Assembly: GCA_037447605.1 (NCBI GenBank)
Contig: CM074810.1
Coordinates: 248,001-312,000, forward strand
DNA from: Zygnema circumcarinatum SAG 698-1b
Lineage: Eukaryota > Plantae > Zygnematophyceae
Reading direction: 5' to 3'
DNA length: 64,000 nt
Below are positions 26,240 through 38,846 of this stretch, in pieces; within the stretch, counting starts at the first letter, position 1, and the number at the start of each line of letters is the position of its first letter. A model generated the notes under the pieces. It saw only the letters and a list, made by a program, of their open reading frames with translations. It was not told the DNA's origin and searched no databases. The position numbers were made by a program, and so were the translations under genes.

Positions 26240-29200
26240 TTAGAACGAAAGAATCACAAAAATTGCCGAGATAAACCCCCATAATATGGCGGTTGAGACC
26301 TTGAACCCCTCAACATTCGGGGCGGAAGAAGGGGGCTTGGTGGAGTCTTGCTTACGATGCCTCCGCCAGGAGGAGGGGGAGAGCTCACTACCCCTGGTGG
26401 AAGAGGAGGAGGAGGAGGGGGGCGTGCTGGGGCACTGCAACTCACACTCAACAACAGGATTAGGTTTCGGGTTTCAGGAAGAGAGAGAGAGAGGGAGAGA
26501 GCGAGAGTGGGAGAGAGGGAATGAGGGAGATGGAGGGAGACGGCAGCGAGGGAGAGGGGGAGAGAAGGGGAAGGAAGGATAATGAGAGGTCAAACATCAC
26601 ACCTATAATCGGAGTATTGGTTGAATTCTAAGAGCAAAATCTTGTCCATGTTGACTGTTGTCCAGTCATCCATGAGGATGCCGCCCGTGTCTACTGAGTT
26701 CGGGCCCCACGTGAAGTAGGTCCAAACCAGCTGCTTAGAACTGCAGACGCAGCCAACAGAAGTTAAGGAAAAGAAAAGGGAGGGGAAGGAAAGAAATACT
26801 ATAAAAATTGGGATGTCTGTATCTTGACATTTCCGAGTCGGGAGAGCGATGAGGTGGAGGAGAAGGGAGGAGAAGGGAGAGGGAGAGAAGGGAAGTGGAG
26901 ATGGGAGGAAGAGGGAGGAGGCAGAGAAGGGAAGTGGAAATGGGAGGGAGAGGGAGAAAGGGGAGGGAGAGAAGGGAAGGGGGAAGGGGAGCGAGAGGAT
27001 ACTACCTGGTTGCATCTCACAGAAGCTTAGACCCTCTCTTTCCTTTTTCTTGTCTTCCCGCTGCCCAGTGCCTCTCCTACCCTCTGCAACTCTTCCCTTT
27101 TGCTCTTTTATTTAATTTTCTATCTCCCTCTGCCTGAACTTTTTCATGCCTATGTGAAACTGACAGTTTCAACATAGAAACCCGCAGTATGCTTGGATCC
27201 GTTTTCTTGGTATGCAAGTTTGGGAAGGAGAAAAGAATGAAGGTCTTACTCTATGTAGTTAAGGAAAGTTTGAAACCATGCTTTCTCGACAAGGGCGAGG
27301 GGCTCCGTGCTGTTGAAGATTACTTTTGTTCCAAATTCTCCCACCCAGACAGGTGCAATATTTTGGTCATGCACAAAGCCGTAAACATTGTCCCAGTGCT
27401 GCTGCAAGTTGTCTGGAAAATTAACCGCTTTGAGCCACGTGTTGTTTGCGACATAAGGGCCATACTCATGGATAGAGTACACGAGCTTATTGGGTTCCTG
27501 AATCGCCGACAAATTTACGGTACGAGTTAAGCAAAACTAAAGCGATGGAAGTGAAATCAGAAAGGGAGCAGTATAGTGGTGAATGCTTTTCAAAATTCAC
27601 AGGGGAGCAATAGTGGAGAGCTCCAAGTATAGTCCTCTCATCTACAGCTAATAGATGTGTTTCATTAGTTGATGCTGGGAGGTGGTGGGGGTTGAACTCA
27701 TGGGGTTGAACTTAGAAAACGAGAGAGAGAGAGAGAGAGATAGAGAAAGAGAGCGACAGACTTACCGTCAGATTCAAGGGATACTGCAGCAAGGGTATGA
27801 GGTTTCCTCCCCAGTTTGCGTCATAATACATTCCTTCCACGCAGATTAGCCAGGCAGGGTTGATCTCCAGAATCGCTTCAGCAGCCCTAAAGTGACCAAA
27901 CAATCAACTCAAATTGGGAGGCGCCAATTAATCATTCCTGTGAGGTAAAGTGATATCCTGATTCCTGAACTTCCAAGAATTGGTCTTTATCGCATGACTG
28001 GGTCTCCCGAATCGTTCAATAGTCACGTTTGTACATTTGGATATTAGTGTTCTCTCCCAATACTTCTTCCGGTTGTCCCATAGCGCTCTAAAAATCCTAC
28101 AAATGTGCTTTATGCGTTCTTTATCACTGATGCAAAAACTCTTTCTTTTATCCAACTTCCTCGTCCCGTCCCTCTCCCCTTCTCTTATCTGCACCTTGAT
28201 GTATTTGGAATCAGCTTCCTTAACTAGTTTATACTGTGCTGCCGAAAATGCTCTCCTGTTGTTAAAAAGGAAAAGACAAAAATCTTGTAAAAAGTTCTTA
28301 CGTTAGTGCAGCATATCGCCAATTGTTGTCGTTTGTGCTCATATCCCAAACGGGAGCAACCGCACCTCCAAAATGAGGCTCGTTGAACAGGTCTACCTGT
28401 ACAACAAAAAACGACTTTCATTCTTCTCGATGCAGAACTTGCACAATAGAGAATAGGTATCACTTTGACTGCAGGATTAATCCCTCTCGCTCTCTCGTTC
28501 TTCTCCTCTCACTTGTCTCTCCGTCGCTGTATCCAGTTCCCTCCATCATCCTTCAAGCTGCCTCTCTGTCAGCTTGCGCCTCTTTCCTCTTTCTAACCTA
28601 CAAGTCACTTGCCTCTCCCTTCTCTTCACTCACTCCCTCTCCCTCTCCCTTCCCCCTCCTTCATACACACACACGCACACTGATTTGCATCCGAAAAGTG
28701 AATTGAATCGGAGACTTATTCGTTGTACTCCAGCATTGACTAAAGCATTGAACAGAGATATGTGAGTCCCCAAAATAGTGGGAAAATTCAAGTGCCGAAT
28801 GATCAGAACTAAAAATCGCCACTAGCAACTCAGATTCCAAGTCCTAAGGTTGCTCCTACTTCGTGTAACCTCGAAACGTGGATGTACGTTTCATTTCTGT
28901 CCCCTCCCCCTCCCCCCCCCCCCTCCCCCCACCTCCCCCCCCCTCCCTCCCCTTCTTTTTCTCTAAGTGTTTCAAACTCACCCCAACTACTGCATCGTAA
29001 TCTTTAAGTGCGGTTGCAACACTCTTCCACGTGTCAAGCCAATACGATGTCGGATACGTTTCATTGTACCAAAGCCCATCCTCCGGCTTTCCGGTTTTAT
29101 CTGTCACGTCACGTCGATGGTAATCCAAAATCACTCTCATGCCTTTGTCTCCGGCAGCTTGCACGACTGACTGCATCGCTTCTATCGAAGTTTTGGCCTT

Positions 29201-36400: not shown

Positions 36401-38846
36401 AGGATGTCGAACTTTGTTGGAAATCTCCGTTTCTCTCTCTCCCTCTCCCTCTCTCTCTCTCTTTCCCTCTCTCTCACTCTCTCTCTTTCCCCCTCGCTCT
36501 CTCTCCCTTTCATGTCATCGGAAGGTTAAGAGTTGTGAAAAGGGTTCTGAGCTTTGGCTTTGTAATTTTGAGCTTTTTTCACTGCAAACACAACATTGAT
36601 GATTATCTCATATTTTGTCTCTATCTCTCTCTTCTCTCTCTCTCTTTGTGTTTTACTTTGCCTCTCCCTCCCCCTCCCCCTCTCTCTCTCTCTCGCTCTC
36701 TCGTCCTCCTATTTGTTTTTGCACATTTTGTGGATGCAGAGTAGGTGCCATGATCCAAGATATTCAGCCGGATTGGCTGATCTGCGTTCAGGGCATGTAC
36801 GACAAAGTCTGGTGGGGGGCAGATCTGCAACCGGCATACTATCTTCCTCCGAAGTTTACGGTGCAGATTTCCCGCCCTCTCCCCAATTGTTGTGAAATAT
36901 TCGCAGGACTTGCAGTCGTAAAAATGCCTGAACTGAATGCCTGAAGGTTTCAAAACAGTGTCAGGAGATGGTCGTCCCTCCCTCTCTCTCCCTCCCATCA
37001 TCTGAACGTGACGGGGCTCCCCAAAAATCATTTATTTTTCTCCTCCTGTTCCTCCCTCCCTTCTGGTCTCTTATCCCTTCCTCCTTCCCTCCTCTATCTG
37101 AACTTGACTTTGTTCTTCCCTATCTCCCTCTCTCCTTCCCTCCTCTATCTGAACTTGACTTTTGTCCTTCCCTATCTCCCTCCCTCCTTCCCTCCTCTAT
37201 CTGAACTTGACTTTTGTCCTTTCCTATCTCCCTCCCTCCTTCCCTCCTCTATCTGAACTCGACTTTGTCCTTCCCTATCTCCCTCCCTCCTTCCCTCCTC
37301 TATCTGAACTTGACTCTGTCCTTCCCCATCTCCCTCCCTTTTTCCCTCTTCCCTTCCCTCTCCCTCCCTCCCTCCCTCCCTCCCTCCCTCCCTCCCTCCA
37401 GATCCCCAACAAGCTGGTGTACACCGTCCACGACTACGGCCCGGTGGTGATCGACCAGCCGTGGCTGAACGCCTCGACCTTCCCCGCCACCCTCCTCCCC
37501 TACTGGAACAGCACGTGGGGGTTCGTGCACGACCGCAACATCGCCCCCGTGTGGGTCGGCGAGTTTGGGAGCAAACTCAACCTCACGGCGGACGTCCTCA
37601 ACACGAGGGAGTACATATGGCTCACGCGATTCATCGACTACATACAGTGAGCGGACACACACATGCATGCATCCATCCATGCACACATCCATGCATCCAT
37701 CCATTCATGCATCCATCCATGCATGCATCCATCCATGCGCTTGTACATGCATGCAGCATGCGTGCATAGCCACGGTATGGAAACCAGGCTATATTCCCGT
37801 TGGTGGGGAAGTGAGTGAGGAGAGAGGAAGACCCTTGTTTGAGGGTTTTTATTTCGAGCTGTCGTTTTCTGATGCGTTTTAGAGCTTTGCGAAGAAGCAC
37901 TTTCTGGTCTTGAAGTTCGTTCCAATCCTCCATCATCTAAAGCCGTAAATAGAATGAAAACGCAAAACCCTGAACCCTAACGGCTGAGCGTGCAGGAACA
38001 AGAGCTTGGTGTGGACATGGTTCACATGGAGCCCCTACTCCCGAGACACGGGAGGAATTTTGGAGGACGACTGGGTAACCGTACGGCTGGATAAAATCAA
38101 CAACCTTTCAAGCATCATGTACCCCGGTTTCCAAAAGTATGCTTAAACCCTACACTATTACCCGGAGCCGTAATCCTAAACCTAAATCCTGAATCATGTG
38201 TCTCAAATAGAGTGAATGAGTGTGAATGCAGTTTTTGCTTTCGAGGGATCCCGCCTTTAGTGGGTGACCTTCCTAACCTAAACCCTAATCCTAGAGCCTT
38301 CCTAACTCTGAACCCTAAATCTTTTGCTAACTTGACCTCAAAATCTGACCTCAAATTTATCAGTTTTAAAAAAAATAAAACCCTCAACTTGAAACTGCTA
38401 CTCAGAACGTTGTCCTACACGCCCTGATTCCTAAAGCTAACCCTAAACCAAATCCCTCACTCTTTTCTGAACCTTGAATCTTAAGTAAACCCTAAACCTA
38501 AACCCTGAACAGTTCCTCGACTCTAAATCCCACAGCTTAAATCGTAAACCCTAACTCTAACCCTAATCCCTTCCCCTCCCTTCCCTAAACCCTAAACCCT
38601 AAACACTCATGCAGATTACCGACCTATGACGGACCCGCTAAACCCCCTCCTCCCTATGGGGTTTTAGCCCCTCCTCTGGGCTCTGTCTACTCCGACCCCC
38701 CCCCTCCCCCCATCTTGGCGGCTTCTCCTCCCCCTCCGTCAGGGAGCGCAGGGGTCGCAAACTTCATCTCCATGGCTGCTCTTCTCTCTCATATGGTGTG
38801 CGCATTAGGAGTATTTATATGGCTTGGAGGAGGATTAGGGTTTTGA
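33498..38846 (+). CDS. GH5 endo-1,4-beta-glucanase, E1-like (GH5_1), copy B, with signal peptide, Pro-rich linker and GPI-like tail
   Basis: Exons 33498-33584, 33958-34029, 34331-34537, 35323-35538, 36122-36234, 36740-36860, 37402-37646, 37996-38136, 38615-38846, all in phase. Motifs GVNWNGFE, FNLIRLPF, LDYHR, FNEPH, WWGADL, NKLVYTVHDYGP, APVWVGEFG, DTGGILEDDW. Ends ...SDPPPPPILAASPPPPSGSAGVANFISMAALLSHMVCALGVFIWLGGGLGF*. Confidence 0.93.
34680..35280. repeat. (CT)n microsatellite, ~600 nt, in a cellulase B intron
   Basis: Nearly pure CT dinucleotide with CCCT interruptions. Confidence 0.95.
37078..37340. repeat. ~52-nt minisatellite, 5 copies, in a cellulase B intron
   Basis: Unit about CTCCTTCCCTCCTCTATCTGAACTTGACTTTGTCCTTCCCTATCTCCCTCC, with TATCTGAACT recurring at ~52-nt intervals. 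Confidence 0.9.

What the first reader, a model, noticed from the sequence alone, without database searches (positions are those of the whole stretch)
26240..38846. Head-to-head pair of bacterial-type (E1-like GH5_1) cellulases domesticated with introns, extensin-like SP4 linkers and GPI-like tails
Seen: both spliced proteins follow the Acidothermus cellulolyticus E1 motif order end to end (GYW.T.G..I.D, G.NW.GFE, IRLPF, LD.HR, NEPH, W.G.L, NKLVY..H.Y, IAPVW.GEFG, DTGGIL.DDW.TV), with both catalytic glutamates intact. They share 7 intron positions and phases, are divergently transcribed from a ~2.8-kb spacer, and end in Pro-rich linkers containing SPPPP; copy B has a small-residue omega-like site (SGSAG) and a hydrophobic tail. 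Known: GH5_1 is mainly prokaryotic, angiosperm wall endoglucanases are mainly GH9, and SP4 is the plant hydroxyproline-arabinosylation motif. Inference: an ancient horizontal acquisition, duplicated by inversion and converted into surface-anchored wall-remodelling enzymes (cell expansion, division or conjugation). Intron content rules out bacterial contamination.
Basis: partly seen in the sequence, partly recalled or inferred. Interest (0 to 1): 0.8.

Follow-up and report, generated by a model that had tools for sequence, protein, structure and literature searches.

The report
Bacterial-type cellulase gene pair in alga
Two neighbouring, intron-rich genes in this green alga encode cellulose-cutting enzymes of a bacterial type that an ancestor of the conjugating green algae took from a planctomycete-like bacterium and fitted with a eukaryotic membrane-anchor tail; this is solid but expected, and the scan had already met the family elsewhere in this genome.

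Summary
Window 26240-30705 (- strand, gene A) and 33498-38846 (+ strand, gene B) carry two divergently oriented GH5 genes. Every exon matches E1-type (GH5_1) endoglucanases best. Seven introns sit at identical alignment columns and phases, and both catalytic glutamates are intact.

The bacterial origin is supported. Algal homologues from Closterium, Mesotaenium and Spirogloea form one clade (94/93). Its sister is a clade in which every named sequence is from Planctomycetota (100/100 for the union), nested among other bacteria. All ten window exon fragments fall inside the algal clade. Three of the seven introns are shared with Closterium. The transfer is therefore old and family-wide, not specific to this locus.

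- A and B are only 49% identical, and A is closer to homologues from other samples, so this is not a recent inverted duplication.
- In gene A, the SPPPP linker lies in what is probably the wrong frame. A donor 7 nt downstream gives a tail homologous to B's.
- Both genes then end in GPI-like tails, and neither looks extensin-like.

The scan found this family before on other DNA of the same genome (s1-343948, s1-321739).

The parts
30805..30884 (-). Gene A: candidate first coding mini-exon, unresolved. Either MFVLKR at 30805-30822 (donor GTGACA, 99-nt intron) or MLPKN at 30870-30884 (donor GTGAGA, 164-nt intron).
   Evidence: Phase-0 ATG...GT candidates upstream of the phase-0 acceptor at 30706. 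Either gives a classic signal peptide with the hydrophobic stretch of exon 2, as in homologue P0002. No RNA evidence.
30541..30705 (-). Gene A exon 2: hydrophobic signal-peptide core plus the GYWSTKG motif.
   Evidence: collinear tblastn with P0002/P0171.
29471..29680 (-). Gene A exon 3: INWNGFE ... IRLPF (conserved Arg codon 29555-29557).
   Evidence: PDB E1 residues 23-78 and EGPh at E about 1e-15.
28982..29197 (-). Gene A exon 4: ILDYHR (His codon 29117-29119).
   Evidence: Pfam PF00150 positions 58-123; PDB CelE2/EGPh/E1.
28302..28396 (-). Gene A exon 5: NEPH, with acid/base Glu codon 28379-28381. Ends in phase 2.
27766..27886 (-). Gene A exon 6.
27250..27497 (-). Gene A exon 7: NKLVYSIHEYGP ... 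VGEFG, with nucleophile Glu codon 27336-27338. Ends in phase 2.
   Evidence: Pfam 2.3e-11; E1 residues 228-302 at E 4e-16.
26596..26740 (-). Gene A exon 8: TWGPNSVDTGGIL.DDW.
   Evidence: tblastn of P0002 runs through to 26596.
26240..26434 (-). Gene A last exon. The preferred frame gives a Ser/Pro-rich linker, small residues (SSAPN) and a 17-residue hydrophobic C-terminus ending at stop 26240-26242.
   Evidence: The last 40 residues of the tail frame align ungapped with B's tail (z 5.8, 0/500 shuffles) and with P0171's (z 4.9). The other frame gives z at most 1.5.
30885..33497 (.). Divergent intergenic spacer, about 2.6-2.8 kb. No mirrored promoter similarity. Contains a MITE-like element at 31888-32114 and CT/CTCCCT microsatellites.
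33498..33584 (+). Gene B exon 1: signal peptide, starting MAHSPKPP, then a hydrophobic core, ending ARPSDA|T.
   Evidence: Assigned by inspection; no predictor was available.
33958..34029 (+). Gene B exon 2: degenerate first motif TPWSTEG.
34331..34537 (+). Gene B exon 3: VNWNGFE ... IRLPF (Arg codon 34454-34456).
35323..35538 (+). Gene B exon 4: LDYHR (His codon 35401-35403).
36122..36234 (+). Gene B exon 5: NEPH, with acid/base Glu codon 36137-36139. Ends in phase 2.
36740..36860 (+). Gene B exon 6.
37402..37646 (+). Gene B exon 7: NKLVYTVHDYGP ... VGEFG, with nucleophile Glu codon 37561-37563. Ends in phase 2.
   Evidence: Pfam 1.3e-8; E1 residues 229-293 at E 4.5e-17.
37996..38136 (+). Gene B exon 8: TWSPYSRDTGGILEDDW. 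Ends in phase 2.
38615..38846 (+). Gene B exon 9: Pro-rich linker with one SPPPP, small-residue site SGSAG, and a 24-residue hydrophobic C-terminus. Stop at 38844-38846.

Best explanation
Genes A and B are two old paralogues of a family of GH5_1-type (E1-like) retaining endo-beta-1,4-glucanases.

Origin: an ancestor of the Zygnematophyceae acquired the family once from a Planctomycetota-like bacterium. The gene then gained spliceosomal introns and a eukaryotic signal peptide. In the subclade that includes this window and Closterium, it also carries a low-complexity Ser/Pro linker and a C-terminal GPI-type (or very short membrane-anchor) hydrophobic tail.

Inferred mechanism:
- The proteins enter the secretory pathway.
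- They are tethered to the outer face of the plasma membrane, at the wall interface.
- They cut beta-1,4-glucan chains of the alga's own wall. The Glu of NEPH acts as acid/base and the Glu of GEFG as nucleophile.

What is shown and what is inferred:
- Shown: gene structure, family identity, intact catalytic residues, phylogenetic position, shared introns, and homology of the two tails.
- Inferred: secretion, anchoring, substrate and biological role.
For: - GH5 domain and best solved relatives E1, EGPh and CelE2, exon by exon.
- Canonical splice sites, with seven introns at identical columns and phases in A and B.
- Three of those introns are identical in position and phase in the Closterium gene (exact spliced alignment; mapping).
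- Careful IQ-TREE: 14 eukaryote rows form one clade (94/93; 92% of bootstrap trees). It includes Closterium, Mesotaenium (P0186) and Spirogloea (P0021).
- Its sister is a 43-row clade whose named rows are all Planctomycetota (100/99), and the union has 100/100. The next outgroups are Gemmataceae plus Alphaproteobacteria, then Actinomycetota, Verrucomicrobiota, Cyanobacteriota and Chloroflexota.
- All ten window exon fragments fall in the Closterium/P0002/P0171/P0024 subclade (SH-aLRT 96).
- A profile of the algal clade found no further eukaryotes in 5.8 billion proteins. There is a score gap from 572-624 bits (algal) to at most 509 bits (bacterial).
- A keeps 60/63 and B 53/63 family-invariant residues, including all catalytic ones.
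- Hydrophobic C-termini are conserved across the subclade, and the tails of A and B are homologous.
- The genomic context is eukaryotic, and six probable DNA runs ('DNA?') from three studies hold 91-96% of the sampled words.
Against:
- A's start codon and its exon-8 donor are model choices.
- GPI attachment and signal-peptide cleavage were judged by inspection only.
- The window genes were placed on the tree as separate exon fragments of 40-82 residues, not as whole proteins.
- Bacterial sampling was biased: it was drawn by similarity to P0002 and by two peptide patterns.
- The tree is unrooted, and the backbone within the algal clade is unresolved.
- Substrate specificity is unknown. GH5_1 also contains licheninase and cellobiohydrolase activities (Aspeborg 2012, PMC3526467).
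Confidence: 0.72

Rival explanations
1. The enzymes work on foreign material rather than the alga's own wall. As secreted or surface cellulases they would digest cellulose of neighbours, epiphytic biofilms, oomycete walls or detritus, for nutrition or defence.
For: The bacterial relatives are extracellular polysaccharide degraders, many carrying carbohydrate-binding modules (Pfam columns). The second algal subclade (Mesotaenium, Spirogloea) has no anchor tail and would be freely secreted.
Against: The window genes and their closest relatives lack any carbohydrate-binding module and carry a membrane-anchor-type tail, which keeps the enzyme at the cell's own wall. The host wall is itself rich in beta-1,4-glucan (general knowledge).
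Confidence: 0.15
2. The hydrophobic C-terminus is a plain type-I transmembrane anchor, or an ER-retention or degradation feature, and not a GPI-attachment signal.
For: No GPI predictor was run. B's tail is 24 residues long and contains His and Gly runs. P0171's tail has three basic residues in its last 25.
Against: The tails end at the very C-terminus with no cytosolic stretch. They are preceded by small residues (SGSAG in B, SSAPN in A) and a short spacer, and they sit on proteins with N-terminal signal peptides. This is the classic GPI signal layout.
Confidence: 0.2
3. The pair is a recent local inverted duplication specific to this genome.
For: The two genes are head to head and share all seven intron positions.
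Against: A and B are 48.6% identical. A is 58% and 57% identical to P0002 and P0171, which come from other samples. The spacer shows no mirrored similarity, only low complexity and a MITE-like element. Earlier notes report at least two further copies elsewhere in the genome, one of them with 7 introns, so shared introns are a family trait.
Confidence: 0.04
4. The family is an ancient eukaryotic or green-lineage gene inherited vertically and lost almost everywhere.
For: The algal sequences form one clade and have old introns.
Against: That clade is nested among bacterial sequences, with Planctomycetota as sister and again in the next outgroup. Two searches of 5.8 billion proteins gave no other named eukaryote. 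[quoted passage not shown]
Confidence: 0.05
5. The genes are bacterial contamination or an assembly chimera.
For: The closest non-algal relatives are bacterial.
Against: There are 15 or more GT-AG introns with conserved phases. Eukaryotic genes lie on both sides. The 10-kb stretch is held at 91-96% by six probable DNA runs ('DNA?') from three studies.
Confidence: 0.01

Closest known systems
Acidothermus cellulolyticus endoglucanase E1 (Cel5A) catalytic domain, PDB 1ECE/1VRX (GH5_1)
   Same: Best or near-best solved match for every exon tested, collinear from E1 residue 23 to 302. Same motif order and both catalytic glutamates.
   Different: E1 is a bacterial, intron-less enzyme. The algal genes have 8 or more exons, a eukaryotic signal peptide, a Ser/Pro linker and a hydrophobic C-terminal tail. 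E1 is not the nearest bacterial relative in the tree.
Planctomycetota GH5 proteins with a Gly-rich linker and MYXO-CTERM-like tail (for example L001 = P0174, L002 = P0183, P0211)
   Same: Sister clade of the algal family (100/100), with about 47% identity to A and B. Same overall layout: catalytic domain, low-complexity linker, C-terminal hydrophobic sorting or anchor segment.
   Different: The bacterial tails carry a Cys motif (GCG..G.E or CGCG) and end in an Arg cluster. One reaches the MYXO-CTERM model exactly at its cut-off (TIGR03901, 20 bits). Many also have CBM6-type modules. The algal tails lack the Cys motif and the basic end.
Zygnematophyte homologues: Closterium CAI5461568.1 (P0006), Mesotaenium endlicherianum ME000246S04152 (P0186), Spirogloea muscicola SM000025S08332 (P0021)
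   Same: Same eukaryotic clade. Closterium shares three intron positions and the hydrophobic tail.
   Different: 44-47% identity to A and B. Mesotaenium and Spirogloea proteins end shortly after the catalytic domain with no tail. The Closterium gene has 4 introns, not 7-8, and no adjacent second copy. All are unnamed or 'hypothetical' in their sources.
KORRIGAN-type membrane-bound endo-1,4-beta-glucanases of land plants (GH9)
   Same: Possible functional analogue: a cellulase held at the plasma membrane and wall interface. This rests on general knowledge and was not tested here.
   Different: Different family and fold (GH9, inverting), and an N-terminal type-II anchor instead of a C-terminal tail.
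Plant GH5_7 mannanases and GH5_14 glucosidases
   Same: Same CAZy family (GH5), present in streptophytes.
   Different: No exon matched a GH5_7 structure such as 1RH9 at E 0.01 or better. No fascin-like insert as in GH5_14. The nearest relatives are GH5_1 endoglucanases.
Other horizontally acquired eukaryotic cellulases and CAZymes (nematode GH5 cellulases; HGT-flagged GH families of Zygnematophyceae in Feng et al. 2024, PMC11096116)
   Same: Same kind of event: a bacterial wall-polysaccharide hydrolase fixed in a eukaryotic nuclear genome.
   Different: GH5_1 is not in the text passage of that paper that lists HGT candidates (its Fig. 4a and supplements were not checked). No paper in the searched library links GH5_1 with zygnematophytes.

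Membership tests
Glycoside hydrolase family 5 (Pfam PF00150, clan GH-A) | Significant match to the family profile over the catalytic domain | tested here: met
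   Exons 4 and 7 of A and exon 7 of B score above the gathering score. Exon 3 matches below it. Profile positions are collinear: 7-48, 58-123, 180-251.
Glycoside hydrolase family 5 (Pfam PF00150, clan GH-A) | Conserved catalytic set: Arg (RLPF), His (DYHR), Asn-Glu acid/base (NEP), His..Tyr (H.YG), Glu nucleophile (GEFG), Trp | tested here: met
   All are present in both genes.
Glycoside hydrolase family 5 (Pfam PF00150, clan GH-A) | (beta/alpha)8 barrel fold | not tested
The fold is inferred from homology to 1ECE.
GH5 subfamily 1 (GH5_1) | Groups with characterised GH5_1 members rather than other subfamilies | tested here: met
   The top solved relatives of each exon are E1 and P. horikoshii EGPh, plus CelE2 and a Xanthomonas endoglucanase whose subfamily was not checked here. 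EGPh (2ZUN) is the GH5_1 representative in Aspeborg 2012 Table 1.
GH5 subfamily 1 (GH5_1) | Formal CAZy/dbCAN subfamily HMM assignment | not testable with these tools
   dbCAN is not available here.
GH5 subfamily 1 (GH5_1) | [quoted passage not shown] | not testable with these tools
   Needs an enzyme assay.
Horizontally acquired bacterial gene in a eukaryote | The eukaryotic sequences are nested within bacterial diversity with support | tested here: met
   euk clade 94/93, union with the Planctomycetota sister clade 100/100, and several bacterial outgroup layers at 95-100.
Horizontally acquired bacterial gene in a eukaryote | Narrow, patchy eukaryotic distribution | tested here: met
   Only zygnematophyte or unnamed transcript sequences were found.
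Horizontally acquired bacterial gene in a eukaryote | True integration in the host genome (introns, host neighbours, independent reads) | tested here: met
GPI-anchored protein | N-terminal ER signal peptide | tested here: inconclusive
   B has a clear n/h/c layout by inspection. In A the hydrophobic core is present but the start codon is unresolved. No SignalP was available.
GPI-anchored protein | C-terminal signal: small omega residues, short spacer, hydrophobic end with no cytosolic tail | tested here: met
   Met by inspection and hydropathy for B and for the preferred frame of A. The two tails are homologous. No NetGPI or PredGPI was available.
GPI-anchored protein | Actual lipid attachment | not testable with these tools
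   Needs PI-PLC release or mass spectrometry.
Extensin-like hydroxyproline-rich glycoprotein module | Repeated Ser-Pro(3-5) motifs | tested here: not met
   B has one SPPPP. A's SSPPPP lies in the frame that is not homologous to the related tails; the preferred frame has STPP and KPPSS only.

The most novel reading that the evidence does not exclude
The anchor may have travelled with the enzyme. Almost all members of the planctomycete sister clade end in a low-complexity linker plus a Cys-containing hydrophobic C-terminal sorting signal of the MYXO-CTERM type. The algal subclade that includes this window ends in a linker plus a hydrophobic GPI-type signal at the same place. The eukaryotic GPI signal could therefore be a re-used bacterial C-terminal sorting signal, lost in the Mesotaenium/Spirogloea branch, rather than a new addition. 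That would be a rare example of a prokaryotic surface-anchoring tag being read by the eukaryotic GPI transamidase after transfer.
Probability: 0.1. Interest if true: 0.7.

Novelty: new member of a known kind. Interest (0 to 1): 0.4.

Why it matters

This family adds a bacterial-type GH5_1 cellulase to the list of wall enzymes gained by horizontal transfer. It is probably surface-anchored and absent from land plants. It is present in at least four zygnematophyte lineages, and I found it described in no paper.

It offers a testable candidate for cellulose trimming during cell growth, cell division or conjugation in organisms that can now be transformed.

It is not a surprise in kind. Such transfers into streptophyte algae are well documented, and the scan had already reported the same family elsewhere in this genome.

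Tried and rejected
There is no read-level evidence for expression, splice sites or A's frame. No letters of 26862-26898 were sent to any database, paper, genome, pattern or findings search afterwards. A local tandem-repeat scan of 26000-39200 did run over them. The stretch lies in the intron between exons 7 and 8 of gene A.
- Joined spliced proteins were never built, searched, folded or put on a tree. Exons were used by reference or as separate fragments.
- The look-up of encoding contigs for P0173 found nothing on record.
- A paper search for the run accessions of the closest cDNA homologues found nothing, so their organism stays unknown.
- NCBIfam on whole planctomycete proteins gave nothing. 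On tails alone, only one (P0211) reached MYXO-CTERM.
- Mini-introns of 38-92 nt inside A's last exon would also restore the tail. I consider them less likely than the alternative donor, because the shortest confirmed intron here is about 160 nt.
- An inverted-repeat search of the spacer gave no mirrored promoter, only low complexity and a MITE-like element.
- Rfam found nothing in 27000-39000.

Full report
**What is there**

The window is eukaryotic DNA of about 50% G+C, rich in CT microsatellites. On the minus strand between 30705 and 26240, and on the plus strand between 33498 and 38846, lie two sets of short open frames. Their translations follow a GH5 catalytic domain from end to end.

Pfam PF00150 is hit by exons 3, 4 and 7 of gene A and by exon 7 of gene B, at collinear profile positions. 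Exon-by-exon searches of the PDB give the same small set each time: Acidothermus E1 (1ECE/1VRX), Pyrococcus horikoshii EGPh (2ZUM/2ZUN), CelE2 (8FC0) and a Xanthomonas endoglucanase. The E1 ranges are collinear at 23-78, 92-156 and 228-302. Aspeborg et al. [quoted passage not shown] No GH5_7 mannanase structure reached E 0.01.

**Gene models**

Every exon border I derived has a canonical AG acceptor and GT donor with consistent phases. When the exon peptides are added to an alignment of full-length homologues, the seven introns of A and B fall at identical columns. The phases are 0, 0, 0, 2, 0, 2, 2.

B has an additional intron between a clean signal-peptide exon (33498-33584) and the first domain exon. 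A's exon 2 begins at a phase-0 acceptor inside the hydrophobic core of a signal peptide. Two short upstream ATG mini-exons would complete it, but I cannot choose between them.

Both catalytic glutamates and the other conserved GH5 residues are intact. A keeps 60 and B keeps 53 of 63 columns that are invariant in twelve relatives. B is the more divergent copy; its first motif is TPWSTEG.

**The C-termini**

B ends in a Pro-rich linker with one SPPPP, then a small-residue patch SGSAG, then a 24-residue hydrophobic end.

A second donor 7 nt downstream (GAT|GTTTGA, exon end 26596, phase 0), joined to the same acceptor, reads the last exon in another frame. That frame gives a Ser/Pro linker, then SSAPN, then a 17-residue hydrophobic end with its stop at 26240-26242.

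- The last 40 residues of the tail frame align without gaps to B's tail (z 5.8, 0 of 500 shuffles).
- They also align to the tail of the cDNA-derived homologue P0171 (z 4.9).

I therefore take the tail frame as the coding one (about 60-70% confidence). Both genes then end in homologous GPI-type signals, and the 'extensin-like SP4' description does not hold. Hydrophobic C-termini are shared by Closterium, P0002, P0171 and P0024. The Mesotaenium/Spirogloea group lacks them.

**Relatives**

A search of 1.84 billion cluster representatives with A's exon 7 gave no hit above 60% identity. The window's own proteins are not in the collections.

The nearest full-length relatives are P0002, P0171 and P0024. 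These come from intron-less contigs of 2-3 kb, from runs SRR8128903/5/7, presumably transcripts; their organism is unknown. Next come Closterium spp., Mesotaenium endlicherianum and Spirogloea muscicola.

A scan of one genome per prokaryotic species found the closest bacterial genes in Planctomycetota MAGs, at up to 45% identity. These were followed by Gemmataceae, Azospirillum, Chloroflexota and Actinomycetota.

**Phylogeny**

A FastTree of 293 domain sequences and a careful IQ-TREE (LG+C20+F+G4, 74 rows) agree.

- The 14 eukaryote rows form one clade (94/93; one clade in 92% of bootstrap trees).
- Its sister is a 43-row clade whose named members are all Planctomycetota (100/99). The union has 100/100.
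- Below it come Gemmataceae plus Alphaproteobacteria, then other phyla.

Bacteria-to-alga transfer from a planctomycete-like donor is the parsimonious reading.

Ten exon fragments, five per gene, were added to the alignment instead. All fall in the starred subclade of Closterium plus P0002/P0171/P0024 (SH-aLRT 96), and within it next to P0002/P0171/P0024 (94).

A profile of the algal clade, searched against 5.8 billion proteins, recovered only members of the query set at 572-624 bits. Planctomycete-type sequences followed at 509 bits or less, and Streptomyces and others at 432 or less. No land plant or other named eukaryote appeared. The candidate cap means this absence is strong but not absolute.

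**Age**

- Spirogloea is the deepest zygnematophyte branch (general knowledge), so the gene was present before the crown group diversified.
- The Closterium gene was solved by exact spliced alignment of its annotated protein to locus L084. It has introns at three of the window's seven positions with the same phases, so these introns predate the split.
- A and B are 48.6% identical over the domain exons. A is 58% identical to P0002 and 57% to P0171.

The pair is therefore not a recent inverted duplication. It consists of two old paralogues that happen to lie, or have remained, head to head. The spacer holds no mirrored similarity. The Closterium locus has no second copy next to it. Earlier notes of this scan report at least two further copies elsewhere in the same genome, one of them with 7 introns. 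Their follow-up reached the same planctomycete-donor, anchor-tail conclusion. I treated those notes as leads and re-derived the result here.

**Integration**

Flanking genes are ordinary eukaryotic ones: MMS19, an F-box/LRR protein, SOUL, a PfkB kinase and a metallophosphatase. Six runs flagged as probably DNA ('DNA?'), from three studies, hold 91-96% of the sampled words of 26240-36239; one of them may be the assembly's own source. Contamination is excluded.

**Mechanism and rivals**

What is shown: two intact genes for retaining GH-A-clan glucanases with secretory and anchor-type signals.

What is inferred: they pass through the ER, are GPI-anchored or otherwise tethered at the outer membrane face, and trim beta-1,4-glucans of the cell's own wall.

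Rivals:
- Action on foreign cellulose.
- A plain transmembrane anchor instead of GPI.
- A change of substrate in the divergent copy B.

**An open idea**

Almost every member of the planctomycete sister clade ends in a Gly-rich linker, a Cys motif, a hydrophobic helix and an Arg cluster. One such tail reaches the MYXO-CTERM model at its cut-off. So the donor protein was probably also anchored to the cell surface by a C-terminal signal. Whether the algal tail descends from it is open; I put this at about 10%.

**Literature**

Feng et al. 2024 list HGT-flagged wall-degrading families in Zygnematophyceae (GH5_7, GH16_20 and others). GH5_1 is not in the passage I read; the figure and supplements were not checked. 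The Spirogyra genome paper mentions only GH5_14. No paper in the library combines GH5_1 with zygnematophyte terms.

**Limits**

- Those places were kept out of all later database, paper and findings searches. A local tandem-repeat scan did cover them.
- No signal-peptide, GPI or dbCAN predictors were available.
- The window genes were placed on the tree as exon fragments, not whole proteins.
- Bacterial sampling was biased.
- The organism is known only as 'organism A', which earlier notes call a streptophyte alga.

**Verdict**

[quoted passage not shown] The family was already seen elsewhere in this genome by the scan. Interest is moderate.

Noticed in passing
window 31888-32114: MITE-like element in the intergenic spacer. 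It has perfect 29-nt terminal inverted repeats 169 nt apart, enclosing about five copies of a 16-nt tandem unit.
   Followed up: partly
window 34634-35281 (intron 3 of gene B); also 35589-35835, 33001-33151, 29803-29873: A roughly 650-bp (CT)n microsatellite of about 325 copies, and further CT / TCCC / CTCCCT arrays, fill the introns and spacer of this locus. They cause the extreme GC and AT skew seen at 34-36 kb.
   Followed up: no
window about 38150-38610 (intron 8 of gene B): The intron is largely made of degenerate plant-type telomere-like repeats (CCCTAAA / AACCCTAA units), seen by eye.
   Followed up: no
window 37074-37348 (intron 6 of gene B): A 51-nt unit repeated 5.4 times at 93% identity, directly upstream of exon 7.
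   Followed up: no
window 46289-49264: A segment of about 1.3 kb appears twice in tandem, with identical 140-aa ORFs at 46988-47410 and 48311-48733. Runs of N (seen as XXXX in translations) lie nearby. This may be a real tandem duplication or an assembly artefact inside a large multi-exon gene on the + strand.
   Followed up: no
loci L001, L002 and proteins P0174-P0211 (Planctomycetota): The planctomycete GH5 clade carries a recurrent C-terminal motif: GCG..G(L/A)E or CGCG, then a hydrophobic helix, then an Arg cluster. Only one variant reaches the MYXO-CTERM model (TIGR03901). The commoner GCG..G.E form matches no NCBIfam sorting-signal model.
   Followed up: partly
window 26596-26603 (gene A, end of exon 8): Two GT donors lie 7 nt apart. 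Joined to the same acceptor, each opens a long frame in the last exon, one with and one without the hydrophobic tail. Alternative use would give anchored and soluble isoforms. C-rich sequence keeps both frames open by chance, so this is only a possibility.
   Followed up: partly
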